Positions 36,647 through 58,240 of a DNA stretch of 64,000 bases are shown piece after piece; position 1 is the stretch's first letter; the number at the start of each line of letters is the position of its first letter. The DNA is taken from assembly GCA_002269645.1 (NCBI GenBank), contig NIVC01002868.1:1-64000 (forward strand), read 5' to 3'. The DNA comes from Macrostomum lignano (Eukaryota). A program made the position numbers and the translations under genes. The notes below the pieces were generated by a model, which was not told the DNA's origin, did no database searches, and saw nothing but the letters and a program-made list of their open reading frames with translations.

Positions 36647-39600
36647 ATGGCAGCAGCAGTTGCAGAAACAGCATTGGTTCCCACTGTGGCCACTCAACAG
36701 CAGCCACCAGCAGAAGATGCTCAACCAAAAGATGACTCAAATCTGTACTCATCTCGCCTGCCTCGAATGACCAAAGAGGAGCTCAAGCGAATCTGCAAAG
36801 AGCTCAAACTGTACCTGACCCCTCACCTGAATGACATTCTCTATCTGCACTATAAAGGCTATGCTCGCATCGAGAACCTGGAAGAGTACACCGGCCTTCG
36901 CTGCCTCTTCCTCGAGTGCAATGGAATTCGAAAATTAGAAAACCTGGACGCCCAGACAGAGATGCGCTGTCTTTACATGGCAAAAAATCTGGTTGAACGA
37001 ATTGAAAATCTTGACTCAATGGTCAACTTGGACACCATCGATTTGAGTCACAATAGTCTGGAACGCATTGAGAACTTGTCTAACTTGACTAAACTGACGA
37101 AAGTGATTTTGGCTCACAACAAAGTCTCCAGCATCGAAGATCTCAAAGGATTGCTGGATTGTCCATCGCTAACCGTGGTTGATTTGCAGCACAATAAAAT
37201 TGATGATGCTCAAGTTATTGATGAGATCTTTGTTAAGATGCCAAACCTGAGGGTGCTATACCTGCAGGGCAACCCAGTGGTCAAGCAGGTAAGGATTTTT
37301 GGTTTATCTTCTTTGACCCATCTATCTGTTTATCGTTCCGCGTGCAACTCCATCCCACCCGTCTTCCCAACTCTTTCCATCATCCAACCCATCCTCCCAT
37401 TCCCACCCGTCTCCCCATCCATTCCAACTTGTCTCCCCATCCTCTCCTATTCCCACCGTCTCCCCATCCATTCCAACTCGTCTCCCCATCCTCTCCCATT
37501 CCCACCCGTCTCCCCATCCTCTCCCATTCCAACTCGTCTCCCCATCCTCTCCCATTCCCACCCGTCTCCCCATCCTCCCATTCCCACCCGTCTCCCCATC
37601 CTCCCATTCCCACCCGTCTCCCCATCCTCCCATTCCCACCCGTCTCCCCATCCTCCCATTCCCACCCGTCTCCCCATCCTCCCATTCCCACCCGTCTCCC
37701 CATCCTCCCATTCCCACCCGTCTCCCCATCCTCCCATTCCCACCCGTCTCCCCATCCTCCCATTCCCACTCGTTTCCCCATCCTCCCATTCCCACCCGTC
37801 TCCCCATCCTCCCATTCCCACCCGTCTCCCCATCCTCCCATTCCCACTCGTTTCCCCATCCTCCCATTCCCACCCGTCTCCCCATCCTCCCATTCCCACT
37901 CGTTTCCCCATCCTCCCATTCCCACCCGTCTCCCCATCCTCTCCCATTCCCACCCGTCTCCCTATCCTCTCCCATTCCAACTCGTCTTCCCATCCTCTCC
38001 CATTCCAACTCGTCTCCCCATCCTCCCATTCCCACCCGTCTCCCCATCCTCCCATTCCCACCCGTCTCCCCATCCTCCCATTCCCACCCGTCTCCCCATC
38101 CTCCCATTCCCACCCGTCTCCCCATCCTCCCATTCCCACCCGTCTCCCCATCCTCCCATTCCCACCCGTCTCCCCATCCTCCCATTCCCACCCGTCTCCC
38201 CATCCTCCCATTCCCACTCGTTTCCCCATCCTCCCATTCCCACCCGTCTCCCCATCCTCCCATTCCCACTCGTTTCCCCATCCTCTCCCATTCCCACCCG
38301 TCTCCCCATCCTCTCCCATTCCCACCCGTCTCCCTATCCTCTCCCATTCCAACTCGTCTTCCCATCCTCTCCCTTTCCAACTCGTCTCCCCATCCTCTCC
38401 CATTCCCACCCGTCTCCCCATCCTCCCATTCCCACCCGTCTCCCCATCCTCCCATTCCCACCCGTCTCCCCATCCTCCCATTCCCACTCGTTTCCCCATC
38501 CTCCCATTCCCACCCGTCTCCCCATCCTCCCATTCCCACTCGTTTCCCCATCCTCTCCCATTCCCACCCGTCTCCCCATCCTCCCATTCCCACTCGTTTC
38601 CCCATCCTCCCATTCCCACCCGTCTCCCCATCCTCCCATTCCCACTCGTTTCCCCATCCTCTCCCATTCCCACCCGTCTCCCCATCCTCTTATAATTTCT
38701 TCTTAACCTCCATCCTACCGGTCTACCCACAGCCTCTCTATCTGTTCCCAAAGAATCATATTTTACCCCCCCCCCTACATATCTACGAGCTAACACCTGA
38801 AATCCACCCCAATATTTACAGATAAAATTCTACCGCAAGACGCTGACCCACAAGCTGCCCAACCTCACTTACCTGGACGACCGTCCGGTGTTCCCCAACG
38901 ACAGGCGCTATGCTGAGGCCTACTTCTCCGGCGGGGCGGAAGCGGAACGAGCCGAACGGAAACTCGTGCAAGAAGAAGAGCAGCAAAAGACCATGGCTAG
39001 CGTGGAGTGGCTGCTAAGGAAGCGCCAGAAGAATGAAGTCGCCACCGCTCAGGTGGGGGACTTGAAACATCGAATCAGGATAATTGTGAAATCCATTTAA
39101 AAGTCACTAAAAACGTTAAAATGAGAATCATCCCCAAATCTCACCTGAGAATCGTCTAAATCTCACCTGGGAATCGTCCCCAACTATCACCTGAGAATCG
39201 TCCCCAAATCTAACCTGAGAATCGTCCCCAACTATCACCTGAGAATCGTCCCCAAATCTCACCTGAGAATCGTCCCCGAACTTCACCTGAGAATCGTCCC
39301 CGAACCTCACCTAAAATTCGTCCCCGAACCTCACCTGAGAATCTTCCCCAAATCTCACCTGAGTATTGTTCCCAAATCTTACCCGAGGATCGTCCCCAAA
39401 TTTCACCTGAGAATCGTCTCCATATCTCACCTGAGAATCGTCCCCAAATCTCACCTGAGAATCGTCTCTAAATCTCACATGAGAATCGTCTCCTAATCTC
39501 AACTAAGAATCTTCCCCAAATCTCACCTGAGAATCGTCCCCAAACCTCACCTGAGAATCGTCCTCAAATCTCACCTGAGAATCGTCTCTAAATCTCACCT

Positions 39601-40206
39601 GAGAATCGTCTCCTAATCTCACCTAAGAATCGTTCCTAAATCTACCTTCACCTGTCCTCATTGTACCCTCAGGCAAAGGCGGAGGCTGCCGCGGTGTCGC
39701 GAGGCGAAGACCCCGCCTCCGTGCCTCCCGTGGATCCCGCCAAGTGCGACTGGCTCTACGGCGATCACGTGACCTCCGACACCAACAGCGATGGCTTCGT
39801 TGACGTGATCGAAGCCGACCCACCCACCGGCGATGCCGGAGACGCCGTCGACAACCTGCCAATGATTGCTCCGCGTCAGAATGACGGCGGTGGAATTTTC
39901 TCCTCTGTCGCCAAGGATGCAGAAGAGCCGGCCGGGGATTCCAGCATCCTGTTGCTAGGCAACTCGCAGCCGTCTGAGGACAGGGATGCCGCTGCGCCCG
40001 CTGTGAAGAAATCTCCGCTGATTGTTGAACTGGATGACATTCAGCCGACTGTTGACGAGCAGATCAGCACCACCAAGGAGCCGGCGGCTGCTCCAGTTGA
40101 GAGCAGCTCGACGCTGTCGATGACTGAAATTCGCGACGCTCTCGAGGTGGCGGTGACTGCGGCAACTGAGGCTGCTAAAAGTCAGCTGGACGATGAGCTG
40201 GATTGA
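36647..40206 (+). CDS. DNAAF1: Dynein axonemal assembly factor 1 (LRRC50/ODA7), 468 aa, 3 exons
   Basis: Exons 36647-37288, 38822-39052, 39673-40206 (all phase 0). [52 protein letters not shown]22-type LRRs and [14 protein letters not shown] are diagnostic of DNAAF1. Confidence 0.93.
37370..38690. repeat. 26-bp minisatellite (CCCGTCTCCCCATCCTCCCATTCCCA)n in DNAAF1 intron 1
   Basis: About 50 tandem copies; source of the long Pro-rich and Gly-rich pseudo-ORFs. Confidence 0.95.
39125..39640. repeat. 24-bp minisatellite (GAGAATCGTCCCCAAATCTCACCT)n in DNAAF1 intron 2
   Basis: About 21 copies; the same unit recurs at 42625-43035. Confidence 0.95.
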
Positions 40207-40550
40207 TTTGTTGATTGATTAATTTATTGATTGATTTACTGATTATCGATTGATTGATTTATTGATTAGTTGATCGATTAATCGATTGATTTATTGATTA
40301 ATTTTTGATTTATTGATAAATTGATTAATTTATTGGTTGATTGATTAATTAATTGATAGACTGAATATGATCGATTGATCGATTGATTCATTAATTGATC
40401 GATCGATCGATATATTGATTAATTAAATTGTTGATTGATTAATTAATTGATCGATCGATTGGTTTATTGATTAAGTGGTTGATTGATTGATTGGTTGATT
40501 AATTGATTGACTGATTATGATCTATTGATTGATTGGTTGATTAATTTTCA
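40205..40550. repeat. Degenerate (GATT)n microsatellite starting at the DNAAF1 stop codon
   Basis: Read directly. Confidence 0.9.
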
Positions 40551-40999
40551 TATTCAAAAGTTATTGATTCAGACTGTGATTTTTTGTGTTTTTTTCTAAT
40601 TTCTTTAATTCCGTCCAAAAATGTGTGTGTGCTTTTTTAATATAAACTATTCGAAAAAAACAAGTGCACTGTTTAACTACTGTTCAGGGTGAGTTTAAGT
40701 AGTATGAGTATCGCTGGGATTCGCTAAATTTATTAATTATAATCGTTTTCTTTACTTTTTTAGTTTACCTATATTGTTTTTGTTTGATGGCAACGTTAAA
40801 AAATACACTCCAGCTTACTCACAGAGCCCTGTCTTTTTACGACAGGTTAAACAGCGAGTTGCTATCAGTGTTAGCGTTCTAGTGTGCATATAGCATTGCT
40901 TTTTTAGGAATTTAGCGTGGCAATATCAAATAGGTGCATTGTTATTCCCACCTCTACCTTATTTGGTCTCTGCCAAATCTATACCCGTCTAGCCCATCT

Positions 41000-41640
41000 A
41001 TAACTCCCCATCGACCTCAACTCCCAATATACCTCATCACCTCATCTACCCCGCCTCCTCATCTACCCCACATCCTCATCTACCCCACATCCTCATCTAC
41101 CCCACATCCTCATCTACCCCACATCCTCATCTACCCCACATCCTCATCTACCCCGCCTCCTCAACTACCCCACATCCTCATCTACCCCACATCCTCATCT
41201 ACCCCACATCCTCATCTACCCCACATCCTCATCTACCCCACATCCTCATCTACCCCACATCCTCATCTACCCCACATCCTCATCTACCCCACATCCTCAT
41301 CTACCCCACATCCTCATCTACCCCACATCCTCATCTACCCCACATCATCATCCACCCCACATCCTCATCTACCCCACATCCTCATCTACCCCACATCCTC
41401 ATCTACCCCACATCCTCATCTACCCCACATCCTCATCTACCCCACATCCTCATCTACCCCACATTATCTACCCCACATCCTCATCTACCCCACATCATCA
41501 TCTACCCCACATCCTCATCTACCCCACATCATCATCTACCCCACATCCTCATATATACCTCATAGATATACCTCATCTCCCCATCTACCCTACCTCCCCA
41601 TCTACCCCACCTTACTATCCACCCAATCTACCCCACTCCC
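41000..41640. repeat. 17-bp minisatellite (CCACATCCTCATCTACC)n between DNAAF1 and MRPL54
   Basis: About 35 copies. Confidence 0.95.
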
Positions 41641-41769
41641 CTCTACCCCACCCTGTTATCTACTATCTTATAAATCGTTTCTAACATAATGAATTATTAA
41701 AGTTTAAAGCCAACCAGCGACTTATAATGTTAGCTCAAATGACGCTATCATCCACCCGCTCTATTCCAG

Positions 41770-42345
41770 CATCCCTCGCTCGTCATCCTAAGCCGCCTGT
41801 CCCGGGCGCATCGGCTGCCATCCCGCCAGCCCCTAAGCCAGATTGTCCGCAGCTTCGCCGCCCCGCCTCCCGGAGGCGCCGCAGGCAAGAAGCTGAAAGG
41901 CAAAGGCGTGGCAGCGATCTCAACCAAGAAGGAGCACCCAGTGGAAACCGATGTCAACAAACTGGCTACTCACCTGTGCATCAACTACTACGTCGACGGA
42001 GAGTACATACCGTTGAAGCCGAAGGATTCTTACCCAGACTGGCTATTCGAGCTCAGCACGGAGATGGAGCCGCGACCTCTGGAAGATCTCGAGCCAGACT
42101 CCGAGATCTACTGGCGTCACGTGATTCAAGCTAAAATGAAAGACGTATTCAAGCTTGGCAAAATGGATGGCTGGATTAAACCGGACCATGTTCACGAGAC
42201 CAACCAGCTGGAGAGGTTCTATGGTGAAACCTATCACGAGGTGCTTAGTCACGAAGCCTCCAAAGTTGGATTGCCAACGAAATCTAGCAGTGCCGATCTG
42301 CTTGAACCTGCAGATGACAAGGCAGCAATCAAGCGTTTAACCTGA
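41770..42345 (+). CDS. MRPL54: Mitochondrial ribosomal protein L54 (mL54); no genomic in-frame start codon, 5' end placed at the splice acceptor
   Basis: Frame open from 41743 to TGA at 42345: HPSLVILSRLSRAHRLPSRQPLSQIVRSFAA...GKKLKGKG...VETDVNKLATHLCINYYVDGEYIPLKPKDSYPDWLFEL...LEDLEPDSEIYWR. This is colinear with MRPL54 (VxTDxxxL, LKPDxEYPxWLFE, LEELDP..YWR). Acceptor CTATTCCAG at 41761-41769. Confidence 0.85.
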   Translation, partial: HPSLVILSRLSRAHRLPSRQPLSQIVRSFAAPPPGGAAGKKLKGKGVAAISTKKEHPVETDVNKLATHLCINYYVDGEYIPLKPKDSYPDWLFELSTEMEPRPLEDLEPDSEIYWRHVIQAKMKDVFKLGKMDGWIKPDHVHETNQLERFYGETYHEVLSHEASKVGLPTKSSSADLLEPADDKAAIKRLT

Positions 42346-42624
42346 AACCCGATGCAGTCAGTATCTAACTCACTGATATCTGAAGTAGTCTTTGTTCATT
42401 CAATTGTCTGCAAGTATACTGTGCAATTAAAATATAACAGTTTCCAATTACAAGCTTTTGTCATCAATTACTTTTAGTAGTTCAGTTGTGTTGTAGAACA
42501 TTATAAATTTTATACACATGAAGTTTATAAACTTTTCAGCTTATTTTAATTGATTGTTGCTTCTAATCTATATGATAGTTTACAGAGAAACTTTCCAAAA
42601 ACCCACCTAAAAATCTAAGAAGCA

Positions 42625-43035
42625 TCCCCAGATCTCACCTGAGAATCGCCTCCAAATCTCACATGAGTATCGTCCCCAAATCTCACCTGAGAATCGTCCC
42701 CGAATCTCACCTAATAATCGGCCTTAAATTCACCTGAGAGTCGTCCTCAAACCTCACCAGAGAACCGTCTCCAAATCTTACCCGAGAATCGTCCCTAAAT
42801 CTCACCTCAGAATCGTCCACAAATCTCACCTGAGAATTGTCCCCGAATCTCACCAGAGAATCGTCCACAAATCTCACCTGATAATCGTTGCCAAACCTCA
42901 CCTGAGAATCGTCGCCAAATCTCACCTAAGAGTGGTCTCTAAATCTCACCTGAGAATCGTCCCCAAATCTCACCTGAGAATCGTCCCCAAACCTCACCTG
43001 AGAATCGTCCTCAAACCTCACCTGGGAATCGTCCG
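42625..43035. repeat. 24-bp minisatellite, same family as in DNAAF1 intron 2
   Basis: (GAGAATCGTCCCCAAATCTCACCT)n, about 17 copies. Confidence 0.95.
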
Positions 43036-43147
43036 TAACGTAGTTTTATGCTAGAAATATTCTTTGAAACTATTTTAAACTACTCAAATCTTTCTGGTCA
43101 GCAAACAAAATAAGCTTGTCAATTAGGTCAAAAACGAAAGGTTTGAA

Positions 43148-43840
43148 ATGTCTTCAGACTCGGCACCGAAGCAGTTATTAACAAAGTTTGTCGTGTCCCC
43201 ACTGACCGGACCGTCGCCCTACATCAAGCCCTACTGCGTTGATTTTGTGCTTGACGGTGTCAATCGCAAGTGGCACTGCATGCGCAACCATGATGCAGTG
43301 GTGATCATTGTGTACAACACAGACCGCAAAGCTCTAGTGTTAGTTCGCCAATTCAGACCAGCAACTTACTTGCAACGCTGTCTAGAGACTAACGGCGGCA
43401 AGCTGGAGTCGTTAATGTCAGTTGAGACTGCTCCGCCTTTGCCAGCAGAAGCTGGCGATGTACTGGAAGCCTGCGCTGGCATCGTTGACAAACCCGACAA
43501 GAGCTTGGCAGAAATTGCTGCGGAAGAAGTGCTGGAAGAGTGTGGCTATCGAGTTGAACCGGATAAACTTGAACTGGTTGGCTGCTGTCGGTCTGGTGTC
43601 GGGGTGTCTTCTGCTAAGCAGACAATCTACTATGCTGAGGTGTCAGATTCTGTGCAAGTCAGCGAAGGCGGTGGAAACGCTGCCGAAGGTGAACGCATTG
43701 AAGTTGTACACTGGCCTGTTGACCAGATCGACCAACTGTTGCTTGGAAGCGGTGGCACTAGCGGTAGTTGTAATGAAATTTACATTGGTCTGCAGTTCTG
43801 CCTTCTCTGGTTCAAGGTTAACAAGATGCAGTCATCGTAG
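43148..43840 (+). CDS. NUDT14: Nudix hydrolase, UDP-glucose pyrophosphatase NUDT14-like (230 aa, intronless)
   Basis: HDAVVIIVYN...LVLVRQFRPA and the variant Nudix box LEACAGIVDKPDKSLAEIAAEEVLEECGY, plus EGERIEVV, as in NUDT14. Confidence 0.88.
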   Translation: MSSDSAPKQLLTKFVVSPLTGPSPYIKPYCVDFVLDGVNRKWHCMRNHDAVVIIVYNTDRKALVLVRQFRPATYLQRCLETNGGKLESLMSVETAPPLPAEAGDVLEACAGIVDKPDKSLAEIAAEEVLEECGYRVEPDKLELVGCCRSGVGVSSAKQTIYYAEVSDSVQVSEGGGNAAEGERIEVVHWPVDQIDQLLLGSGGTSGSCNEIYIGLQFCLLWFKVNKMQSS

Positions 43841-44069
43841 TTGCCAAAGTTTTTAATATAGGCAGTTTCTTTAAACAGTTTTAATCATTTCAACTTGCGA
43901 AATATTTCATGCAACACTGCTATCGTTTTGCAATTGGTTTATTTTTCTGTTTAAAAGTAAATTTAGACTTTTACATAAATAAAATATTTCTTTAGCCAAG
44001 TGGCACGTAAACTTTGCAATTTTTAACTTTCGGATTAAGAATTCTTTTTGAGATAAGGAACTTCATTTG

Positions 44070-44770
44070 GGGGACTTGGGATTCTTCTTAGGCATCAGGG
44101 ATTCCCCTTGTTGATGAGGGATTCTCCTTAGGTACCTGGAAATCTCCATTGCTAGTGAGGGGTTCTCCCTAGGTATCTGGGATTCTCCATTGTTAGTGAG
44201 GGGTTCTCCCTGGGTATCTGGGATTCGTCCTGGGTATCTGGAATTCCATCGTGGTATCTAGGATTCCCGTTGGAAATCTGGGACTCCCCTTGGTTATTTG
44301 GGATTCCCCTTGAGTATTCGGGAGTTAGCTTGGGTATCTGGGATTCCCCCTGGGTATCTGGGATTCCCTCTGGGTATCTGGGAGTCCTGGGTATCTGGTA
44401 TTCCCCTTGGGTATCTGGGATTTCTCTTGTGTTTAGTGGGATTCCCCTTGGGTAAAGTGGGATTCCACTTGGTATCTAGGATTCTCTTAGGTATAATGGG
44501 ATTCCCTTGGGTATCTGGGATTCCTCTTGGGTATAGTAGGAATCCTTTTGGGTATTTGGGATTTCCCTTGGGTGTCTGGGATTCCCCTTGGGTGTCTGGG
44601 ATTCCCCTTGGGTGTCTGGGATTCCCCTTGGGTATCTGGGATTCCCTTGGTTATCTGGGATTTCCCTTGGGTGTCTGGGATTCCCCTTGGGTGTCTGGGA
44701 TTCCCCTTGGGTATCTGGGATTCCCTTGGTTATCTGGGATTTCCCTTGGGTATCTGTGATTCTCTAATTT
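44070..44770. repeat. 20-bp minisatellite (ATTCCCCTTGGGTGTCTGGG)n between NUDT14 and TTC21B
   Basis: Tandem, variably degenerate copies. Confidence 0.93.
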
Positions 44771-44846
44771 TTCTAATTTTCTGTCTCCTTGGGGATCATA
44801 ATTAATTCATACATATCCCCTACTGGTGCATGCTCTCCCAGCAACC

Positions 44847-48768: not shown

Positions 48769-48801
<33 letters not shown>

Positions 48802-48805
48802 TTTA

Positions 48806-48839
<34 letters not shown>

Positions 48840-48840
48840 G

Positions 48841-48892
<52 letters not shown>

Positions 48893-48929
48893 AGTCAGTC
48901 TGTCTGTCTGTCTGTCTGTCTGTCTTTTA

Positions 48930-48963
<34 letters not shown>

Positions 48964-48964
48964 G

Positions 48965-49008
<44 letters not shown>

Positions 49009-49032
49009 AGTCAGTCTGTCTGTCTGTCTGTA

Positions 49033-49064
<32 letters not shown>

Positions 49065-49092
49065 AGTCAGTCTGTCTGTCTGTCTGTCTGAC

Positions 49093-49159
<67 letters not shown>

Positions 49160-49160
49160 G

Positions 49161-49195
<35 letters not shown>

Positions 49196-49196
49196 G

Positions 49197-49251
<55 letters not shown>

Positions 49252-49252
49252 G

Positions 49253-49296
<44 letters not shown>

Positions 49297-49305
49297 AGTC
49301 AGTCA

Positions 49306-49374
<69 letters not shown>

Positions 49375-49376
49375 AC

Positions 49377-49425
<49 letters not shown>

Positions 49426-49444
49426 GGTTGTCTGTCTGTCTGTG

Positions 49445-49475
<31 letters not shown>

Positions 49476-49516
49476 GTGTCTGTCTGTCTGTCTGTCTGTG
49501 TGTCTGTCTGTCTGGC

Positions 49517-49569
<53 letters not shown>

Positions 49570-49572
49570 GTG

Positions 49573-49615
<43 letters not shown>

Positions 49616-49656
49616 GTGTCTGTCTGTCTGTGTGTCTGTCTGTCTGTCTATCTGTG

Positions 49657-49693
<37 letters not shown>

Positions 49694-49696
49694 GTG

Positions 49697-49763
<67 letters not shown>

Positions 49764-49816
49764 GTGTCTGTCTGTCTGTCTGTCTGTCTGTCTTTTAGTC
49801 TGTCTGTCTGTCTGTG

Positions 49817-49849
<33 letters not shown>

Positions 49850-49853
49850 TTTA

Positions 49854-49885
<32 letters not shown>

Positions 49886-52800
49886 GTTTGTCTGCCTGTC
49901 TCTCTGTCTGCCTGTGTGTCTATCCGCCTCTATCTCCTGCTTACTAACTGTGAACTGTCAGTTGCACAGAAGCATTCAGCAAGTGTCACACACTTTCATT
50001 AGCAAAATCATTCGACTCATAATATAACTTTTATTCAACGACAATTTTGCTTATTTACTCAGAATTTTTTCATGCTTTGAAGTTGTTTGGTGCTTTATTA
50101 AAATATAAAGTACATGTTGAATGCGGTGCAACTACTTATAGTAGCTTGCCTTTTTGCCTCTGATTCTTGTGGTTGTCAGTGGAACTTCAGTGTCACGTGA
50201 GACATTTTCATAAGTAATTTCCTCTTTTTTAAGTAATACTGTTAAGCTTTTTATTAACTAAATTAAGAAAAAATATTTGAATGCAATTTTTATTGACTAA
50301 TACTCGTAAAGAATAACCAACTACAGCTTCTGTTATTACGTGTTTACTCAAATTTCAGGACTCAGTCGCAAAGGTAATTATAGACAGAAAAATGCTCGTT
50401 TTAATCAGGTTGGGGGTCCTTGAAAAAGTGTTGTCTTCCTAATTGAGAGCGCTTAAATAAATAAATCATTTGCACAGTATATGTGTATTTTTCTACATCT
50501 TGTAGTACATTGTGTCCTGTTGCTTTTGTCTCTGTCCGCCTGTGTCTTCTTCCAGGTAGAAAATATTGCTATGTAAACTATCATAGAATTTGAAGTCTTT
50601 TTTGAAATTATTATGCCAGCCTGTGATCTATCATCATCTATGTTTCTCTTTTATAATTCTTAATTGTGTCATATTTTTACTAAATTACTTTAATTTTATA
50701 CTCTAATTCTATTTTTAAATACTTTGTTATTTTTTAAGGATCTGAGCTTTCTATTGGCTGTGCTGGCTAGAAAGCGAGGTGCTCCGCCTAATAAAATACT
50801 GGCTCACCTGGATGATGCAATTCAGCAGCATTTTGCCAGCTTCAAGGTGAGGCTTTAAATTTTAGAATGTACAGTCGCTGTTGAGAATTCCCTGGATTTA
50901 TAAGTGCACATAAGCAGTATTCCCTTGAATTTCCCAGTGTACTCGTACATTATAGGAATTCCCTGGGATTTCCCAGTGTACATTATAGGGATTTCCTTGG
51001 ATTTCCCAGTGTACATTATAGGAATTCCCTAGGATTTCCCTGTGTAAAGTTTAGGGATTCCACCACAGGATTTCCGGGTGTACGATATATGGGATTCCCT
51101 GGGACTTCAAAGTTGACAGTTATAAGAATTCCCTAGATTTCCCAGGGGAATTTCCCTGTATACAGTAGGGATTCCAGTGCGGAATTGCAGTGCGGAAATT
51201 AGCGTCAATTAGTCTTTTTAGGTCGTCATCAATTTTTTTATTTTACAGTCCCCTACTTGACATCCCCACCTGCAGGGCCTGGCTCTCGGCCCGGACTACT
51301 ATCACTCTCTCAACCCGGACTTCCTCATCCAACTGGTGCACGAGTATCTGGTCCACGCGCCTCAGAAGCCGTCGGCAGCTGGTGGCGGTCAAGTAATCGA
51401 TCCGGTTCTGCGCCGGTGCACCCAACTGCTGGACCCGCTGACCAGAGCAATGCCCGGTCTGCTGGAGGCTCTGTACCAGATGGCCAAGATCCGCTACCTG
51501 CTGGGTGACAATGAGTCAGCTCTGGCCAAGCTGGAGACTTGCATCGACAATGACCCGGCGTTCAGTGCCGCATTCCTGTTGAAAGCCCAGATCCTGGTGC
51601 ACCAGGGTAACCTGAGACTTGCCGAGCAGGCACTGGACAATGCACTGAGTCACAATTTCGAAGTTCGAGACTCGCCTCTGTATCATCTGACATTGGCCAG
51701 GGTGTTGAAAGGCCAGAAACGGCTTGATGAAGCTATCCAGAGTCTGCAAGCCGCTGTTAAACTGATTAGCAGTGCTCAGCAGGTAAACTAAATGAGAATA
51801 TGTGGTACTATTTAGCGTGAATGTAGCAGTAGCATAAGTGACTATTGTCAGCGATCTCTGCCCAGTTCATGTGTACTTACAGGGAATTCCCTAGCTTTCA
51901 TGCGTACACTAAGGAAATTCTCTACATTTATCTGCACAGTTGGGGACAGTTGGGGAATCCCTCAGAGTCATATGTACAGATAGGGTATCCAATTAGATTC
52001 ATGCATTTATGTACAGTAAAGGAATTCCCTAGATCCCAATGTACAGTGAGAGAATTCCCTTAGATTCCAATGTACAGTAAGGGGACCCCATTAGATCCAA
52101 ATGTACAGTAAGGGAATTCCCTAGCTTCAAATATACGGCGAGGGAATTTCCTTAGATTCAAAAAGTACAGTGAGGGAATTCCCTTAGATTCAAATGTACA
52201 GTGAGGGAATTCCCTAGATTCAAATGTACAGTGGGGAAATTCCCTTAGATTCAAATGTACAGTGGGGCAATTCCCTTAGATTCAAATGTACAGTAAGGCA
52301 ATTCCCTTAGATTCAAATGTACAGTAAGGCAATTCCCTTAGATTCAAATGTACAGTGAAGGAATTCCCCATAAATTCAAATATACATCAAAGGAATTCCG
52401 TAGCTACGCAATTAACCCCAGATTTTCCAGACTCCACTCAAGCATCATCATACCTATCTTAAATAAAATATCTCGCACCACTAGGCGGCCGCTAAGAAGG
52501 GCGCTCAGCAACAGCAGCAGCAGCAGTCGCAGCAATCTCAACAGATGACCAGCGCCGATAGACTCAGCGTCTACTTAGAGCTCGCCGAGGTGTACCGCCT
52601 CGCCGATCGGCCTCACGAAGCCACCAAAGTGCTGCAAGATGCTCAGAACGATTTCGCTGGCAGTCCTGAGGAGGTCCGCGTCACCATCAGCAACGCTGAC
52701 TTGGCCCTGCAGCGAGGCGACATTGAGATGGCGCTGGGCACCCTGCGGACCGTCACGCCTGACCAGGCCTACTTCACCGAGGCCAGGAAACGGATGGCTG

Positions 52801-55800
52801 ATATCTACCTGCAGCATCGCAAGGTGCGCGTTTGATTGTCTGGAATCTTGTCAGACTTGTCTGGAATCTTGTCAGACTTATCTGGAATCTTGTCAGACTT
52901 ATCTGGAATCTTGTCAGACTTGTCTGGAATCTTGTCAGACTTATCTGGAATCTTGTCAGACTTGTCTGGAATCTTGTCAGACTTGTCTGGAATCTTGTCT
53001 GACTTATCTGGAATCTTGTCTGACTTATCTGGAATCTTGTCAGACTTATCTGGAATCTTGTCTGACTTATTTGGAATCTAGTCAGACTTATCTAGAATCT
53101 TTTCAGCCTTATCTAGAATCTTGTCAGACGTATCTAGAATCTTGTCAGACTTTAAGGTATCTAGAATACATATATGGAATCTTGTAAGACTTATCTGGAA
53201 TTTCGTCAGGCTTTTCTTGAATCTTGTCAGACCTAACTTTAAATATGGTTAAACTTATCTGGAATCTTGTCAGACATATTAAAAATCTCGTCAGACTTAT
53301 CTGGAATCTTGTCATGCTTGTATGAAATCTTGTCAGAATTTTTTGGGATATTGTCAGTCTTTTCTGGAATCTTGTCAGACTTATCTAGAATCATGTCAGA
53401 CTTATCTAGAATCTTGTCAGACTTATCTAGAATCTTGTCAGACTTATCTAGAATCTTGTCAGACTTATCTAGAATCTTGTCAGACTTATCTAGAATCTTG
53501 TCAGACTCATCTAGAATCTTGTCAGACTTATCTAGAATCTTGTCAGACTTATCTAGAATCTTGTCAGACTTATCTAGAATCTTGTCAGACTTATCTAGAA
53601 TCTTGTCAGACTTATCTAGAATCTTGCCAGACTTATCTAGAATCTTGTCAGAACTAATTGAAATCTTGTCAGACTTATTTTAATATTGTCAAACTTATTT
53701 AGAATATTGTCAGACTTTTCTCAAATATCGTCAGACTTATTTAGAATCTTGTCAGACTTATCTAGAATCTTGTCAGACTTATCTAGAATCTTGTCAGACT
53801 TATCTAGAATCTTGTCTACCCCATCATGACCCCGCCAGGACAAGCGCCTGTACGCCGCGTGCTACCGCGAGCTGGCTGAGAAGATGCAGACCCCGGAGAC
53901 CGACCTGCTGCTTGCAGACGCCTACATGGCCATCCAGGAGCCCGAGAAGGCCATCGAAATCTACGAGAGCGTGCTCAAGCGGAACAGCAGAGACGCAGCT
54001 TTGGCCACAAAGATGGGCCAGGCTCTGGTGAAATGCCACAGCTACAAGAAAGCCGTCACCTACTATGAGCACGCGCTCAAATCTGGTCAGACTTTTTTAA
54101 GATTCGATCTTGCTCAACTGCTGCTCAGGCTGAAGCAGTACGATAAGGCTGAGAAGACTCTGGCCCCTGCTGAGGAGACCAGTTCCGAGGATCCGGTGCT
54201 TGCCGCCAAGCTGCTGCATCTCAGATCTCAGGTCTTTGTTCAGCAGGGTCGAACTCAGGAGGCCGCCGAGGCGCTCAACTCGGCCAAGACTCTGCTCACC
54301 AAAGCGCTGCGCCGGGGCGTTGAGAATGCCGATGAGGAGCAGGTGAGGCTGAAGATGGGGGAGAATTTCGGGTCCGATTCTGAAAAGCAAGGAAAGCCTA
54401 TTCTGAATTTTTAACGACTCAAGCGCGTCACGTCAGTTTGTAAAGTCGTCCAAGAATGGTTTTGTTGGCGCTTAACTTTCGATAGAGATGCGACTCAAAT
54501 TCATATCTAGCGACGCAGATGTACTTTAAACACTACTCATTGTCTGCAGCGATTCTAGCACGCCTCAGATACGACACTGACGACTTCTGCCCCATTGTCG
54601 CAGTAAATAAAACGCTTCAAAATTGACTTTGAGGCTAAATTAGAATCTCGGCTTGGCTCTGCTCGTGCAATTAACGGCCTTGATGGCCAACCCCCAAGGC
54701 GCAGTGAAGTGTACATGTCTAACGATAATATAAAGTTAGGGCCGCTGTACACTCCTGTGTGAGTGTGTGCCTGCGCGTTTGACTGCTCAGGGGAGTCGGC
54801 GGAATGGGCAGCAATGCCTCTCGCCGGTTGTGTGACAATGTCGCTTATAAAGTGCACCAGACTGCACACAGCCTCCTGCCTTTGAGTCTAACAAAGTCCA
54901 CTCATGCCCCATCCCGCAGCTCCGGCAGCTGAAGGAGCGAATCCATCTGGAGGCAGCCCGACTGGCCAGGGACCGGGCAGACCTGGACTCCGCCAAGCAG
55001 CTGTACGCTGATGCCGGGCCCACAGGCGGCCTGGAGCTGGTGCGCCTGCTGATGTCTCAGGACGATTTGGACACCGCGCAGCAGCATGCGATGCGGCTGG
55101 TGGCGAAAAATCCTGAAGATGATCAGGCGGTGTTCCTCCTGGCTGAGCTGCTGTGCCAGCAGGGAGACCTGCAGCAAGCCGCCTATCACTACAGGTTGGT
55201 GATGCACAAGGTTCACAAAATCCCTAAATCCCCGGATTCACAAAATAATCCCTAAATCCCTAGATTCACAAAAATCCCCAAATTCCCAGATTCACAAAAA
55301 TCCCTAAATCCCCAGATTCACAAAAATCCCTAAATGCCCAGATTCACAAAAATCCCTAAATCCCCAGATTCACAAAAATCCCTAAATCCCCAGATTCACA
55401 AAAATCCCTAAATGCCCATATTCACAAAAAATCCCTAAATCCCCAGATTCACAAAAATCCCTAAATCTCTAGATTCACAAAATATCCCTAAATCCCCACA
55501 ATCACAATAATCCACAAATCCTCAAATTCCCAGATTCACAAAAATCCCTAAATCTCCATATTCACAATTATGCCGTCGCAGGCAGCTGCTGGAGTCCCGG
55601 CCGGACAACTACCCGGCCGTTGCCCGCCTCATCGACGTGCTGCGCCGTCTCGGCCGCCTCGAAGAAGCCGCCCCTTTCGTCCTCGCCCAGTCTGCGCGCG
55701 CCCGTGTCGATGGCGGCTTCTGCTACTACCGCGGCCTCTACGAGTGGCACTGCGGCAACGCTGGCGAGGCGCTGCGTCAGCTGAACCGGGCCCGGCTGGA

Positions 55801-55928
55801 CTCTGACTTCCAGCAGGAGGCCGTGTTCTGCATGGTGGAGATCTGCATCAATCCCGATAACAACACGCTGGGAGGGGAGCTGTTCGACTCCGGGTGAGCT
55901 GGGGGAGACAGCTGTCTGTCTGTCTGCC

Positions 55929-55981
<53 letters not shown>

Positions 55982-55992
55982 GCCTGCCTGCC

Positions 55993-56037
<45 letters not shown>

Positions 56038-56067
56038 GCCTGTCTGTCTGTCTGTCTGTCTGCCTGC

Positions 56068-56117
<50 letters not shown>

Positions 56118-56172
56118 GCCTGCCTGCCTGTCTGTCTGTCTGCCTGTCTGCCTGTCTGTCTGTCTGTCTGCC

Positions 56173-56233
<61 letters not shown>

Positions 56234-56284
56234 GTCTATCTGCTATCTATCTATCTGTCTATCTATCTATCTATCTGTCTATCA

Positions 56285-56320
<36 letters not shown>

Positions 56321-56321
56321 G

Positions 56322-56370
<49 letters not shown>

Positions 56371-56424
56371 ATATCTATCTATCTATTTATCTATCTGTCT
56401 ATCTATCTATCTATCTGTCTATCA

Positions 56425-56472
<48 letters not shown>

Positions 56473-56482
56473 GTCTATCTAC

Positions 56483-56520
<38 letters not shown>

Positions 56521-56561
56521 CTCTGTCTATCTATCTATCTACCTATCTATCTATTTATCTG

Positions 56562-56602
<41 letters not shown>

Positions 56603-56637
56603 ATATCTATCTATCTTTCTATCTATCTATCTATCTG

Positions 56638-56678
<41 letters not shown>

Positions 56679-58240
56679 ATATCTATCTATCTATCTATCT
56701 ATCTATCTGTCTATCTATCTATCCATCTATTCATCTATCTAATCTATCTATTCTAACCCCCAGCGACATGCCAGCCGGAGACGCAGAGTCCATGGGGCTG
56801 CGCACGGCGGAGCGCCTGCTGCACGAGTTGAAGCCCCGGAGCGGCCCGGGCGGCAACGCTGCTCGCCTTCGCGTGGAATACCTCAAAGCGATGGTGCTGG
56901 TGGCAGGCAAGCAGAAGGCAGGCGCTGACAAGGCCGTCCAGATCTTCAACCAGATGCTGAGCCAAGACAAACTGTACGTACCGGCCATCTACGGCCTGGC
57001 GGCAGCGCACATGGTGGCCAAGAACAGCGCCAAAGCTCGCAGCACACTGAAGCCGCTGGTCACGGTCACTTGGTCGCTTGAGTTTGCCGACGAGCTGGAG
57101 AAAGGCTGGCTGCTGCTGGCCGATATGAGTGTCCAGTCTGGCGGCAGCCGATCCGAAGGCGCCCAGGAGCTGCTGGCCAAGGTTCTGCAGCACAACAAGG
57201 CCTGCTACAAGGCCTACGAGTATTTGGGATTTCTAATGGAGAAGGAGCAGAACTACAAGGATGCGGCTAGGAATTATGAGCTGGCTTGGAGATATTCAAA
57301 TCAGACTAATCCGGCCATCGGATTCAAGCTGGCGTTCAACTATTTGAAGTCTAAGAAACTCGTGGAGGCTGTGGACATCTGCCACGTGGTGAGTTGCCGC
57401 CCTGCGGCTGCTGCGGGATAGGGGGAGATGCCGGTGCGGAGGGTTGAGGGACAAGTGGAGAAGGTAGGTTCGGAGGGTGTGGAGGGTAGAGTAGGAGGGT
57501 GTGGAGGGTAGGGTCGGAGGGTGTGAAGGGTAGAGTCGGAGGGTGAGGAGGGTAGAGTCGGAGGGTGTGGAGGGTAGGGTAGGAGGGTGTGGAGGGTAGA
57601 GTCGGAGGGTTTGGAGGGTAGGGTAGGAGGGTGTGGAGGGTAAGGTAGGAGGGTGTGGAGGGTAGAATCGGGGAGGGTGTGGAGGGTAAGGTAGGAGGGT
57701 GTGGAGGGTAAGGTAGGAGGGTGTGGAGGGTAGAATCGGGGAGAGTGTGGAGGGTAGAATCGGGGAGGGTGTGGAGGGTAGAGTCAGGGAGGGTGTGGAG
57801 GGTAGAGTCGGAGAGGGTGTGGAGGGTAGAGTCGGGGAGGGTGTGGAGGGTAGAGTCAGGGAGGGTGTGGAGGGTAGAGTCAGGGAGGGTGTGGAGGGTA
57901 GAGTTGGAGAGGGTGTGGAGGGTAGAGTCGGTGGGTATGGAGGGTAGGGTAGGAGGGTGTGGAGGGTAGAGTCGGAGAGGGTGTGGAGGGTAGAGTCGGA
58001 GAGGGTGTGGAGGGTAGAGTCAGGGAGGGTGTGGAGGGTAGAGTCGGAGAGGGTGTGGAGGGTAGAGTCGGTGGGTGACTCGGAGGACATGGATGGTGTG
58101 GAGGGTCCAAATCTACTCAAACTAACTAACCTATAAAACCTGTTTCTGCTCCCCCACCGCAGGTACTCAAGAACCACCCGACTTATCCGAAGATCAAGAA
58201 GGAAATTCTTGACAAAGCCAGACAGCAGATCCGAGCTTGA
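44847..58240 (+). CDS. TTC21B: IFT-A subunit IFT139 / TTC21B, 1315 aa, 12 exons
   Basis: Exons 44847-45278, 45898-46275, 47334-47432, 48189-48479, 50739-50846, 51276-51782, 52485-52823, 53839-54342, 54920-55194, 55582-55893, 56764-57388, 58163-58240; all GT-AG with phases consistent, 3948 nt. Many TPRs; diagnostic [49 protein letters not shown] and C-terminal [16 protein letters not shown]. Confidence 0.95.
45360..45810. repeat. ~17-18-bp minisatellite (GAGTACATGATCCTTAA)n, TTC21B intron 1
   Basis: Degenerate tandem copies. Confidence 0.9.
46290..47225. repeat. 27-bp minisatellite (CTTGGGATTTCCATGTAGTTTAGGAAT)n, TTC21B intron 2
   Basis: About 34 copies. Confidence 0.93.
47770..48125. repeat. 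24-bp minisatellite (ATAAATCCGCCCCTATCACTATCC)n, TTC21B intron 3
   Basis: About 14 copies. Confidence 0.93.
48722..49910. repeat. (TCTG)n microsatellite, ~1.2 kb, TTC21B intron 4
   Basis: Read directly. Confidence 0.97.
50885..51180. repeat. ~33-bp degenerate minisatellite (TTTCCCAGTGTACATTATAGGGATTTCCTTGGA), TTC21B intron 5
   Basis: Several degenerate copies. Confidence 0.8.
51930..52390. repeat. 30-31-bp minisatellite (GTACAGTGAGGGAATTCCCTTAGATTCAAAT)n, TTC21B intron 6
   Basis: About 13 copies. Confidence 0.9.
52835..53815. repeat. 21-bp minisatellite (TTATCTAGAATCTTGTCAGAC)n, TTC21B intron 7
   Basis: About 45 copies. Confidence 0.95.
54633..54880 (+). mobile_element. 5'-truncated SINE copy in TTC21B intron 8
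   Basis: High similarity by eye to 10740-11010. Confidence 0.75.
55205..55565. repeat. 26-bp minisatellite (CACAAAAATCCCTAAATCCCCAGATT)n, TTC21B intron 9
   Basis: About 13 copies. Confidence 0.93.
55912..56745. repeat. Compound (TCTG)n then (TCTA)n microsatellite, TTC21B intron 10
   Basis: Read directly; the switch is near 56215. Confidence 0.97.
57470..58100. repeat. G-rich 22-24-bp minisatellite (GGAGGGTAGAGTCGGAGAGGGTGT)n, TTC21B intron 11
   Basis: Tandem copies read directly. Confidence 0.93.

What the first reader, a model, noticed from the sequence alone, without database searches (positions are those of the whole stretch)
36647..58240. Candidate trans-spliced operon DNAAF1-MRPL54-NUDT14-TTC21B
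Four same-strand genes are separated by 1.56, 0.80 and 1.01 kb, much of it tandem array, leaving only ~300-600 bp of unique DNA each. The spacers look like the introns: a poly(A)-like signal (ATTAAA 42426, AATAAA 43978), a minisatellite, then an AG acceptor just before the next CDS (41769, 43126, 44841). The unit would join two ciliary genes (dynein assembly, IFT-A) with a mitoribosomal protein and a Nudix hydrolase. Operons resolved by SL trans-splicing are known in flatworms; this particular unit is my inference.
Basis: partly seen in the sequence, partly recalled or inferred. Interest (0 to 1): 0.75.

Follow-up and report, generated by a model that had tools for sequence, protein, structure and literature searches.

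The report
Flatworm four-gene trans-spliced operon candidate
Four unrelated genes lying head-to-tail in the flatworm Macrostomum lignano very probably form one of the thousands of spliced-leader operons already known in this species, so it is an ordinary case with two instructive details.

Summary
The window is contig NIVC01002868.1 of the Macrostomum lignano Mlig_3_7 assembly. Operons resolved by one 35-nt spliced leader (SL, ending in ATG) are already documented genome-wide here. About 15% of genes are in operons, defined by a repeat-adjusted gap under 1 kb, and this locus meets that criterion.

New evidence:
- mL54 (MRPL54) has no ATG of its own. In both paralogous contigs GenBank annotates its CDS as 5'-partial, starting at the base that aligns with window 41770. 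The SL ATG is in frame there.
- The three paralogous copies differ just upstream of four gene starts, always towards the SL 3' end (TG, ATG, CATG, GCATG). All 27 cis-splice acceptors keep AG. I read this as a footprint of the published RNA-seq Pilon polishing.
- A shared transcriptional-unit name and chimeric DNAAF1–mL54 models suggest co-transcription of the first pair only.

A single transcript covering all four genes is not shown. Verdict: a new member of a known kind, of low to moderate interest.

The parts
33714..36644 (+). Divergent intergenic region holding the presumed promoter and outron of the unit. It lies between the start of the minus-strand kinase gene (ATG 33713) and the DNAAF1 acceptor.
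   Evidence: Inference. The upstream neighbour is on the opposite strand. No promoter test was possible.
36639..36644 (+). Inferred SL trans-splice acceptor of DNAAF1, boundary 36644|36645, 2 nt before the ATG. It reads TTTCTG in the window and L002 and TTCATG in L004. The presumed true sequence is TTTCAG.
   Evidence: Two adjacent columns vary towards the SL sequence among the paralogs. Restoring the AG gives the published [T/C]TNCAG motif.
36647..40206 (+). DNAAF1-like gene. Exons 36647-37288, 38822-39052 and 39673-40206; 468 aa.
   Evidence: Pfam LRR_4/LRR_8/LRR_9. The model equals GenBank PAA54712.1, BOX15_Mlig007820g2, which UniRef names 'Dynein axonemal assembly factor 1 homolog'.
40147..41769 (+). 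Interval removed in the chimeric 613-aa UniProt models. It runs from an internal donor GAG|GTGGCG (40146|40147) to the mL54 acceptor, and the junction is in frame.
   Evidence: P0126 and P0127 join ...IRDALE directly to HPSLV.... My reconstruction is in frame.
40207..41769 (+). Spacer 1 (1563 bp). It holds a (GATT)n array at 40201-40546, a 17-bp minisatellite at 41040-41610, and 652 bp of unique DNA.
   Evidence: The unique parts are conserved and the arrays vary in length among the paralogs.
41764..41769 (+). SL trans-splice acceptor of mL54. It is TTCCAG, intact in the window, with boundary 41769|41770.
   Evidence: The GenBank 5'-partial CDSs of both paralogs start at the aligned base. The paralogs read CTG and ATG here, both towards the SL sequence.
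41770..42345 (+). mL54 (MRPL54) coding sequence: 191 genomic codons plus the stop. It has no in-frame genomic ATG. The initiator AUG is inferred to come from the 3' end of the SL.
   Evidence: The frame is open from 41743 with no ATG. The SL ends in ATG. Human mL54 matches at E=8e-14 with a presequence of matching length. This CDS is not annotated in the window contig.
42426..42431 (+). ATTAAA, the likely poly(A) signal of mL54.
   Evidence: Conserved in all three copies. Its function is inferred.
42618..43034 (+). 24-bp minisatellite in spacer 2. It is the same family as the array in DNAAF1 intron 2.
   Evidence: It is longer in the paralogs.
43091..43096 (+). Candidate SL acceptor of NUDT14. 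It reads TTTCTG in the window and TTTCAG in both paralogs. Boundary 43096|43097, 51 nt before the ATG.
Evidence: A single A-to-T column, in the SL direction. This is not significant on its own.
43148..43840 (+). NUDT14 (UDP-glucose pyrophosphatase), a single exon of 230 aa.
   Evidence: Pfam NUDIX. The paralog is 97% identical and named NUDT14, and many animal NUDT14 proteins hit at about 1e-40.
43978..43983 (+). AATAAA downstream of NUDT14. It occurs in the window copy only.
   Evidence: The paralogs read AAAAAAA here, so its use as the signal is doubtful.
44077..44764 (+). 20/40-bp minisatellite in spacer 3.
44827..44832 (+). Inferred SL acceptor of TTC21B, boundary 44832|44833. The window reads TGCATG, L002 TTGATG and L004 TTGCTG. 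The presumed true sequence is TTGCAG.
   Evidence: Three adjacent columns vary towards the SL sequence in a graded series. The 5'-partial CDS of L004 starts 1 nt after this boundary.
44847..58240 (+). TTC21B/IFT139 gene, 12 exons, 1315 aa. Exons: 44847-45278, 45898-46275, 47334-47432, 48189-48479, 50739-50846, 51276-51782, 52485-52823, 53839-54342, 54920-55194, 55582-55893, 56764-57388, 58163-58240.
   Evidence: Pfam ARM_TT21 domains. Human TTC21B matches at E=0. The model minus its first 3 aa equals PAA54714.1.

Best explanation
This is a spliced-leader (SL) operon of the kind already catalogued in Macrostomum lignano.

Proposed mechanism:
- RNA polymerase II starts somewhere in the 2.9-kb divergent region upstream of DNAAF1 and reads through about 21.6 kb.
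- Each cistron gets its 5' end by trans-splicing of the single 35-nt SL (…TTGCATG) onto a [T/C]TNCAG acceptor. The acceptors are at 36644|36645 (DNAAF1), 41769|41770 (mL54), probably 43096|43097 (NUDT14) and 44832|44833 (TTC21B).
- Each cistron gets its 3' end by cleavage and polyadenylation inside the spacers. The spacers are short once the minisatellites that have expanded in them are discounted.
- mL54 has no start codon of its own and must be translated from the AUG at the end of the SL.
- For DNAAF1 and TTC21B the SL AUG is out of frame. For NUDT14 it opens a 10-codon upstream ORF. All three use their own AUG.

Shown:
- The gene models, same-strand order, distances and arrays.
- The absence of an in-frame genomic ATG for mL54.
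- The annotated mRNA 5' end at the mL54 acceptor in two paralogs.
- SL-ward sequence differences among the copies at the acceptors.

Inferred:
- That those differences are polishing footprints of SL-bearing reads.
- That one precursor covers all four genes.
- Where the promoter and the poly(A) sites lie.
For: 1. Background. M. lignano has one SL ending in ATG. About 30% of its genes are trans-spliced and 15% are in operons. Repeats inflate the intercistronic distances, the operon threshold is 1 kb after subtracting repeats, and the acceptor motif is [T/C]TNCAG. Assembled precursor RNAs with several trans-splice sites are reported.

2. The locus fits the definition. Four + strand genes lie with no intervening minus-strand gene. 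Repeat-adjusted gaps are at most 652, 334 and 304 bp.

3. mL54.
- Its frame is open from 41743 but has no ATG.
- The GenBank CDSs of both paralogs are 'partial', 191 aa, and begin with HPSLV. That is the base aligning with window 41770, right after the acceptor.
- Gene boundaries in that annotation were cut at SL-read peaks.
- The SL AUG is in frame and gives a presequence rich in Arg, Ser and Leu with no acidic residues in the first 40 aa. Its length matches human mL54.

4. SL footprints.
- In a 3-way alignment, 343 of 11,112 non-array columns vary (3.1%).
- Only three sites have two or more adjacent columns that vary as a graded suffix of GCATG: 36644, 41769 and 44832. All three lie 0-14 nt upstream of a gene start.
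- The chance that three sites all fall within 20 nt upstream of one of the four starts is about 4e-7.
- AG is intact at 27 of 27 cis-acceptor instances but at only 3 of 12 putative trans-acceptor instances (Fisher p = 1e-6).
- The assembly was polished with Pilon using STAR-mapped RNA-seq, which gives a mechanism for the effect.

5. Co-transcription of the first pair.
- The window's DNAAF1 is Mlig007820g2, and the mL54 of the third copy is Mlig007820g1. The prefix denotes a 95% cluster of transcriptional units.
- Two UniProt models fuse DNAAF1 in frame to the mL54 acceptor. In other flatworms such chimeras are taken as traces of polycistronic pre-mRNA.

6. The four-gene order is kept in all three paralogous contigs.
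Against: - No transcript data could be examined directly.
- NUDT14 (Mlig034078) and TTC21B (Mlig026721) sit in transcriptional-unit clusters separate from mL54 and from each other. The authors do say that units break at repeats.
- The raw spacers (0.75-1.56 kb) are far above the roughly 100-bp mode, and each keeps 300-650 bp of unique DNA that could hold a promoter.
- The NUDT14 footprint is a single column, which is not significant alone.
- The annotated 5' ends of TTC21B in the window and L002 lie 23 and 4 nt downstream of the inferred boundary.
- About 60% of trans-spliced genes in this species are not in operons.
- The chimeric models may be ab initio artefacts caused by the missing ATG.
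- The paralogs are recent duplicates (3% divergence), so conserved order among them says little.
- There is no synteny in Anoplocephala.
Confidence: 0.55

Rival explanations
1. A partial operon. DNAAF1 and mL54 are co-transcribed as a dicistron. NUDT14 and/or TTC21B are transcribed from their own promoters in the unique parts of spacers 2 and 3, and their outrons are removed by SL trans-splicing.
For: Only the DNAAF1-mL54 pair has annotation-level links, namely the shared Mlig007820 prefix and the chimeric models. NUDT14 and TTC21B have separate transcriptional-unit clusters. Most trans-spliced genes in this species are monocistronic.
Against: Repeat-adjusted gaps of at most 334 and 304 bp fall inside the published operon mode. 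The authors state that transcriptional units split at repeat-rich spacers. No promoter feature was found in the spacers, and the X-box scan was at chance level.
Confidence: 0.25
2. Four independent genes that merely sit close together. Each has its own promoter and is trans-spliced as a monocistronic transcript. The chimeric models and the shared name are annotation artefacts.
For: The raw spacers are 0.8-1.6 kb. The four functions are unrelated and the proteins are needed in different amounts. The missing ATG of mL54 would push ab initio predictors to fuse it to DNAAF1.
Against: A shared transcriptional-unit cluster between a DNAAF1 gene and an mL54 gene requires an assembled RNA covering both. 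The locus meets every published structural criterion.
Confidence: 0.15
3. The differences among the copies at the four boundaries are real polymorphisms, for example decaying acceptors in redundant paralogs. They would then not be polishing footprints and would say nothing about trans-splicing.
For: The copies differ at 3.1% of columns overall. Single-column differences towards the SL sequence are common by chance, with 42 such sites. L004 would even gain a genomic ATG for mL54.
Against: - All eight variable columns carry the SL base at that offset, and the matches form nested suffixes: TG, ATG, CATG, GCATG.
- The three multi-column sites all lie 0-14 nt from a gene start.
- For DNAAF1 and TTC21B this reading would leave every copy without an AG, while all 27 cis-acceptor instances are intact.
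- GenBank mRNAs start at the mL54 boundary even in the copies that lack the AG.
- RNA-seq polishing is documented.
Confidence: 0.1

Closest known systems
Macrostomum lignano SL operons and 'transcriptional units' (Wudarski et al. 2017, PMC5730564; Ustyantsev & Berezikov 2021, PMC8629364)
   Same: Same organism and the same single SL. The locus has the same acceptor motif, same-strand adjacency, repeat-inflated spacers and a repeat-adjusted gap under 1 kb. A four-gene unit is within the reported range of 2-9 genes. The first gene is itself trans-spliced, as in 82% of their operons.
   Different: None in kind. This particular unit is not described in any text I could search. The GenBank record annotates the genes separately and omits mL54 in this contig.
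Caenorhabditis elegans SL2-type operons
   Same: A polycistronic precursor is resolved by 3' end formation plus SL trans-splicing. The genes are functionally mixed and include a mitochondrial one.
   Different: M. lignano uses one SL for all positions and has no specialised SL2. The spacers are 0.75-1.6 kb and full of minisatellites, against roughly 100 bp in C. elegans. No Ur-like element was examined.
Flatworm SL 3'-terminal AUG used as initiator methionine (Cheng et al. 2006, cited in PMC12582326; slORFfinder, PMC9851317)
   Same: The SL ends in AUG. The mL54 acceptor is in phase, and the recipient ORF lacks any AUG of its own.
   Different: The cited reference (Cheng et al. 2006, from its title) concerns the flatworm SL in general. 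Here the use of the SL AUG is inferred from sequence and annotation only, and translation was not tested.
Chimeric gene models over operons in parasitic flatworms (Calvelo et al. 2025, PMC12582326)
   Same: A cis-splice runs from a donor in the upstream gene to the trans-splice acceptor of the downstream gene. The same acceptor serves cis- and trans-splicing.
   Different: Whether the two M. lignano UniProt chimeras rest on transcript evidence or on ab initio prediction could not be established, because the source paper was not available.

Membership tests
M. lignano SL operon (criteria of Ustyantsev & Berezikov 2021) | Adjacent genes in the same orientation, not interrupted by a gene on the other strand | tested here: met
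   The called genes in the contig give DNAAF1, NUDT14 and TTC21B on the + strand with nothing between them, plus the mL54 ORF. The same order holds in two paralogous contigs.
M. lignano SL operon (criteria of Ustyantsev & Berezikov 2021) | Repeat-adjusted intergenic distance below 1 kb | tested here: met
   The upper bounds, measured from stop codon to acceptor with arrays subtracted, are 652, 334 and 304 bp. True values are smaller because the 3' UTRs are included.
M. lignano SL operon (criteria of Ustyantsev & Berezikov 2021) | Downstream genes carry the SL, with SL reads at an acceptor | tested here: inconclusive
   No reads were available. Indirect support is strong for mL54 (annotated 5' end at the acceptor, no ATG, footprint) and good for TTC21B (graded footprint, 5' end of the L004 CDS). 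It is weak for NUDT14, with a single column.
M. lignano SL operon (criteria of Ustyantsev & Berezikov 2021) | Acceptor motif [T/C]TNCAG at the exon-outron junction | tested here: met
   TTCCAG is intact at 41769. TTTCAG is present in the paralogs at the position of 43096. TTTCAG and TTGCAG result at 36644 and 44832 if the T at -2 is restored to A.
Operon in the strict sense (one promoter, one polycistronic precursor) | An RNA molecule spanning two or more cistrons | not testable with these tools
   Only hints exist for DNAAF1-mL54: the shared transcriptional-unit cluster prefix Mlig007820 and the chimeric 613-aa models. There is nothing for mL54-NUDT14-TTC21B.
Operon in the strict sense (one promoter, one polycistronic precursor) | No independent capped transcription start in the spacers | not testable with these tools
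The bacterial promoter scanner is not applicable.
SL-donated initiator AUG | The SL ends in AUG and the acceptor places it in frame with an ORF that has no AUG of its own before the conserved domain | tested here: met
   The SL is ...TTGCATG. The frame is open from 41743 with no ATG, and 41770 is in phase. The alignment to human mL54 starts at residue 28, against residue 33 in human.
SL-donated initiator AUG | Translation actually starts at the SL AUG | not testable with these tools
   This needs N-terminal proteomics or reporter assays.
C. elegans-type SL2 operon | A specialised downstream SL and roughly 100-bp intercistronic regions | tested here: not met
   A single SL is reported for the species. 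The raw spacers are 751-1563 bp.

The most novel reading that the evidence does not exclude
The reference assembly itself records the trans-splice sites. Mlig_3_7 was polished with RNA-seq, so SL-bearing reads overwrote the last 1-5 genomic bases before trans-splice acceptors with SL bases (AG becomes TG, ATG, CATG or GCATG).

If this holds genome-wide, three things follow:
- Many acceptors, possibly thousands, in the reference are corrupted.
- Some 'genomic' start codons are really SL-derived.
- Trans-splice sites can be read off by comparing paralogous copies.

In this locus it would also mean that all four genes, including the first, are trans-spliced. mL54 would then depend entirely on the SL for its start codon, inside an operon bracketed by two ciliary genes.
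Probability: 0.6. Interest if true: 0.4.

Novelty: new member of a known kind. Interest (0 to 1): 0.3.

Why it matters
As an operon it adds one case to about ten thousand operon genes already predicted in this species, so its biological weight is small. Three points have some practical value.

1. mL54 is a clean example of a conserved, essential gene whose start codon exists only in the spliced leader. This explains why it is missing or 'partial' in the GenBank annotation and fused to DNAAF1 in UniProt.

2. The SL-ward base changes at acceptors look like a systematic side effect of polishing a genome with RNA-seq in a trans-splicing organism. Users of Mlig_3_7 who design promoters or transgenes, call splice sites or predict start codons should know about it.

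3. Two ciliary genes, one for dynein arm assembly and one for IFT-A, would be tied to one promoter together with a mitoribosomal protein and a Nudix hydrolase. That is a testable case of whether operon membership constrains tissue-specific expression.

Tried and rejected
- **Homology searches that found nothing.** The searches with mL54 and with TTC21B exon 1 returned no hits. For mL54 the reason is that the paralog proteins are filed in a cluster whose representative is a DNAAF1 protein. I recovered the proteins by exact look-up after rebuilding the gene models.
- **Literature and supplements.** Searches of the supplements of three M. lignano papers for the four gene names gave nothing. A full-text search for the four Mlig identifiers also gave nothing. 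The paper describing the older ML2 assembly, which I take to be the source of the chimeric UniProt models, was not held under the id I tried.
- **RNA genes.** Rfam and tRNA scans of the window found nothing, so no RNA gene explains the conserved unique DNA in spacer 1.
- **Ciliary promoter motif.** A scan for the RFX X-box, looking for a ciliary promoter upstream of DNAAF1 or TTC21B, gave 6 matches against 3.4 expected and none in those places.
- **Single-column footprint test.** It does not discriminate. The SL suffix scores 42 sites, the same as the average 5-mer, so the NUDT14 site stays weak.
- **First gene-model attempts.** My first two-intron search for DNAAF1 failed because intron 2 has a GTGGGG donor. 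My first TTC21B model carried two spurious micro-exons, which I removed using the human alignment and the known product length.
- **An upstream ATG-bearing exon for mL54.** Two weak candidates exist in spacer 1. No annotation supports them.
- **Synteny.** A. perfoliata shows none.

Full report
**Source of the window**

An exact look-up of the single-exon Nudix ORF (43148-43840) places it on NIVC01002868.1 of GCA_002269645.1, at identical coordinates. The paralogous proteins are named 'BOX15_Mlig… [Macrostomum lignano]'. The window is therefore the first 64 kb of a contig of the Mlig_3_7 assembly of the free-living flatworm M. lignano.

**The observation**

The four genes are real.

- **DNAAF1-like gene.** It has three exons (36647-37288, 38822-39052, 39673-40206) and gives 468 aa. 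This is identical to GenBank PAA54712.1, which UniRef calls 'Dynein axonemal assembly factor 1 homolog'.
- **mL54/MRPL54.** The frame at 41770-42345 gives only a weak Pfam hit, but it matches human mitoribosomal mL54 at E=8e-14.
- **NUDT14.** 43148-43840 is a typical NUDT14.
- **TTC21B/IFT139.** I built a 12-exon model, 44847-58240, 1315 aa. I corrected it against human TTC21B (8fgw_D, E=0) and the known product length. Without its first 3 aa it is identical to PAA54714.1.

The gaps from each stop codon to the next CDS are 1563, 802 and 1006 bp. Tandem arrays occupy 911, 417 and 688 bp of these, leaving 652, 385 and 318 bp of unique DNA. The same 24-bp minisatellite family occurs in DNAAF1 intron 2 and in spacer 2, so 'the spacers look like the introns' is a fair description. 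ATTAAA (42426) and AATAAA (43978) are present. The first is conserved in the paralogs and the second is not.

**What is already known**

M. lignano has a single 35-nt spliced leader, CGGTCTCTTACTGCGAAGACTCAATTTATTGCATG.

- About 30% of its genes are trans-spliced and about 15% are assigned to operons of 2-9 genes.
- The authors found that repeats inflate intercistronic distances. They therefore define operons by a repeat-adjusted distance below 1 kb.
- The acceptor motif is [T/C]TNCAG (PMC8629364).
- The genome paper reports that almost 7% of assembled transcripts are precursors with several trans-splice sites.
- It also reports that gene boundaries in the deposited annotation were cut at peaks of SL reads and poly(A) reads (PMC5730564).

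**mL54 has no start codon of its own**

The mL54 frame is open from 41743 but contains no ATG before the conserved domain. The two ATGs just upstream (41727, 41739) are in another frame. The acceptor TTCCAG|CAT at 41769|41770 puts the terminal ATG of the SL exactly in frame.

The resulting N-terminus is MHPSLVILSRLSRAHRLPSRQ…. In its first 40 residues it is rich in Arg, Ser and Leu and has no acidic residue. The alignment to human mL54 begins at residue 28, against residue 33 in human, so the presequence has the right length.

Two paralogous contigs carry the same four genes in the same order: L002 (NIVC01001448.1) and L004 (NIVC01001464.1). In both, GenBank annotates mL54 as a 'partial' CDS of 191 aa that starts with HPSLV. 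That is the base aligning with window 41770. Transcript ends in that annotation come from SL-read peaks, and a 5'-partial ORF begins at the first in-frame codon of the transcript. The annotated mRNA 5' end therefore coincides with the acceptor.

In the window contig mL54 is not annotated at all. Use of the SL AUG as initiator is known for flatworms (Cheng et al. 2006, cited).

**SL footprints in the assembly**

The three copies differ precisely in the bases before this boundary. The window has CAG, L002 has CTG and L004 has ATG. The Methods of the genome paper state that the Canu assembly was polished with Pilon using Illumina DNA reads and RNA-seq mapped by STAR. End-to-end alignment was used for the transcriptome work.

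Reads that begin with the last few SL bases would then be laid over the genome with mismatches just upstream of a trans-splice acceptor. They could overwrite it with …GCATG.

I aligned window 33148-53840 with L002 and L004. Outside the tandem arrays, 343 of 11,112 ungapped columns vary (3.1%). Only three places have two or more adjacent variable columns whose alleles form nested suffixes of GCATG. They are listed below with the weaker NUDT14 site.

| Boundary | Gene | Window | L002 | L004 | Distance to gene start |
|---|---|---|---|---|---|
| 36644 | DNAAF1 | ttCTG | ttCTG | tCATG | 2 nt before the ATG |
| 41769 | mL54 | CAG | CTG | CATG | 0 nt |
| 43096 | NUDT14 (single column) | tttcTG | tttcAG | tttcAG | 51 nt before the ATG |
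| 44832 | TTC21B | GCATG | tGATG | tgCTG | 14 nt before the ATG |

- The chance that three sites all fall within 20 nt upstream of one of four gene starts is about 4e-7.
- All eight variable columns carry the SL base at the matching offset.
- As a control, the nine cis-splice acceptors covered by the alignment keep AG in all 27 instances and show no variation at -1 to -4. Only 3 of the 12 putative trans-acceptor instances keep AG (Fisher p = 1e-6).
- Restoring A at -2 gives TTTCAG, TTCCAG, TTTCAG and TTGCAG, all of which fit the published motif.
- For TTC21B, the 5'-partial CDS of L004 starts 1 nt after the inferred boundary.
- The NUDT14 single-column difference is common by chance, with 42 such sites in the alignment.

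I conclude that mL54, TTC21B and DNAAF1 are very probably trans-spliced. The TTC21B acceptor is at 44832|44833, not at 44841. This rests on the inference that the differences are polishing artefacts. Raw DNA reads would settle it.

**Is it one transcript?**

The evidence here is thinner.

- Locus tags follow the names of the transcriptome assembly, in which a prefix is shared by transcriptional units that cluster at 95% identity.
- The window's DNAAF1 is Mlig007820g2, and the mL54 of L004 is Mlig007820g1. This requires an assembled RNA that contains both DNAAF1 and mL54 sequence.
- Two UniProt models (613 aa) join DNAAF1 at …IRDALE to HPSLV…. That is a cis-splice from the donor GAG|GTGGCG (40146|40147) to the same acceptor, and it is in frame.
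- In parasitic flatworms such chimeras and shared cis/trans acceptors are treated as traces of polycistronic precursors.
- However, a predictor faced with an ORF lacking an ATG could produce the same fusion.
- NUDT14 (Mlig034078) and TTC21B (Mlig026721) have their own unit clusters. The authors warn that units break in repeat-rich spacers, so this is weak evidence either way.
- Conservation of gene order among the three copies is uninformative because they are recent duplicates.
- The one other flatworm locus I could fetch (Anoplocephala perfoliata NUDT14) has unrelated neighbours on the other strand.

**Extent of the unit**

Upstream of DNAAF1 the next gene is a kinase on the minus strand whose ATG is at 33713. 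DNAAF1 is therefore the first cistron. The promoter and outron should lie in 33.7-36.6 kb.

Downstream of the TTC21B stop (58240), GenBank has no CDS for 10 kb. There is an unannotated WSC-domain ORF (ATG 59763) with a perfect X-box-like site about 140 bp upstream. This suggests a separate promoter, so the unit most likely ends at TTC21B.

**Consequences for translation (inferred)**

- With the SL attached, DNAAF1 has the SL AUG 5 nt before its own AUG and out of frame, opening a 42-codon overlapping ORF.
- TTC21B has the SL AUG 17 nt before its own AUG, also out of frame, opening a 29-codon ORF.
- NUDT14 would carry a 10-codon upstream ORF.
- Only mL54 needs the SL AUG.

**Verdict**

It is an instance of a class already described genome-wide in this species, so novelty and interest are low to moderate. 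The two by-products are more useful than the operon itself: an SL-dependent start codon for mL54, and SL-derived bases written into the reference at trans-splice acceptors.

Noticed in passing
window 36641-36644, 43095, 44828-44832; L002 8276-8277 and 11750-11754; L004 8321-8323 and 11771-11775: The last 1-5 bases before the inferred trans-splice acceptors differ among the paralogous copies, always towards the SL 3' end (TG, ATG, CATG, GCATG). All cis acceptors are intact. This looks like a systematic artefact of polishing the assembly with RNA-seq. It could create false genomic ATGs and destroy AG acceptors across Mlig_3_7.
   Followed up: yes
window 41770-42345: The mL54 gene is not annotated in this contig in GenBank, although both paralogous contigs carry it as a 5'-partial CDS. 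UniProt holds two 613-aa DNAAF1-mL54 chimeras (A0A1I8J7K7, A0A1I8G661) that end 27 aa before the mL54 stop, for reasons I could not explain.
   Followed up: partly
window 16682-16691 (minus strand): A TPR-protein gene on the minus strand has its ATG inside ttaatGCATG|GATTCT, a 6-nt match to the SL 3' end. This may be another SL site, with either an SL-derived or an SL-imprinted start codon. The whole of 1-33.7 kb holds same-strand (minus) genes: a receptor-like Ser/Thr kinase, the TPR protein and a START-domain gene. They may form a second operon.
   Followed up: no
window 59612-59625 and 59763-60239: A perfect RFX X-box-like palindrome, GTCGCCTTGGCAAC, lies about 140 bp upstream of an unannotated ORF. 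The ORF has a signal peptide and a WSC domain (Pfam 3e-16). It may be a cilia-related gene with its own promoter.
   Followed up: partly
window 58754-58996, 10743-10983, 54637-54846: A dispersed repeat of about 240 bp (86-92% identity) occurs three times: downstream of TTC21B, inverted in a TTC21B intron, and inverted near 10.8 kb. My first gene model placed a spurious exon in the intron copy.
   Followed up: partly
Both paralogs read AAAAAAA there and lack 7 nt. This may be a real indel, or a poly(A)-read analogue of the SL footprint marking the cleavage site. A conserved AGTAAA lies about 20 nt upstream.
   Followed up: no
window 44846/44847 versus L002 11769-11779: An 11-nt indel (GGACAGCAACC, a near-duplication of CAGCAACC) lies in the TTC21B 5' leader. 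It is present in both paralogs and absent in the window. The annotated 5'-partial CDS of the window copy starts 3 codons after the ATG, which is unexplained.
   Followed up: partly
window 48723-49921 and 55912-56751: Very long tetranucleotide arrays lie inside TTC21B introns: (TCTG)n with about 300 copies, and (CTGT)n/(TCTA)n. Almost every intron and spacer of the locus carries its own minisatellite, and copy numbers differ among the paralogs.
   Followed up: no
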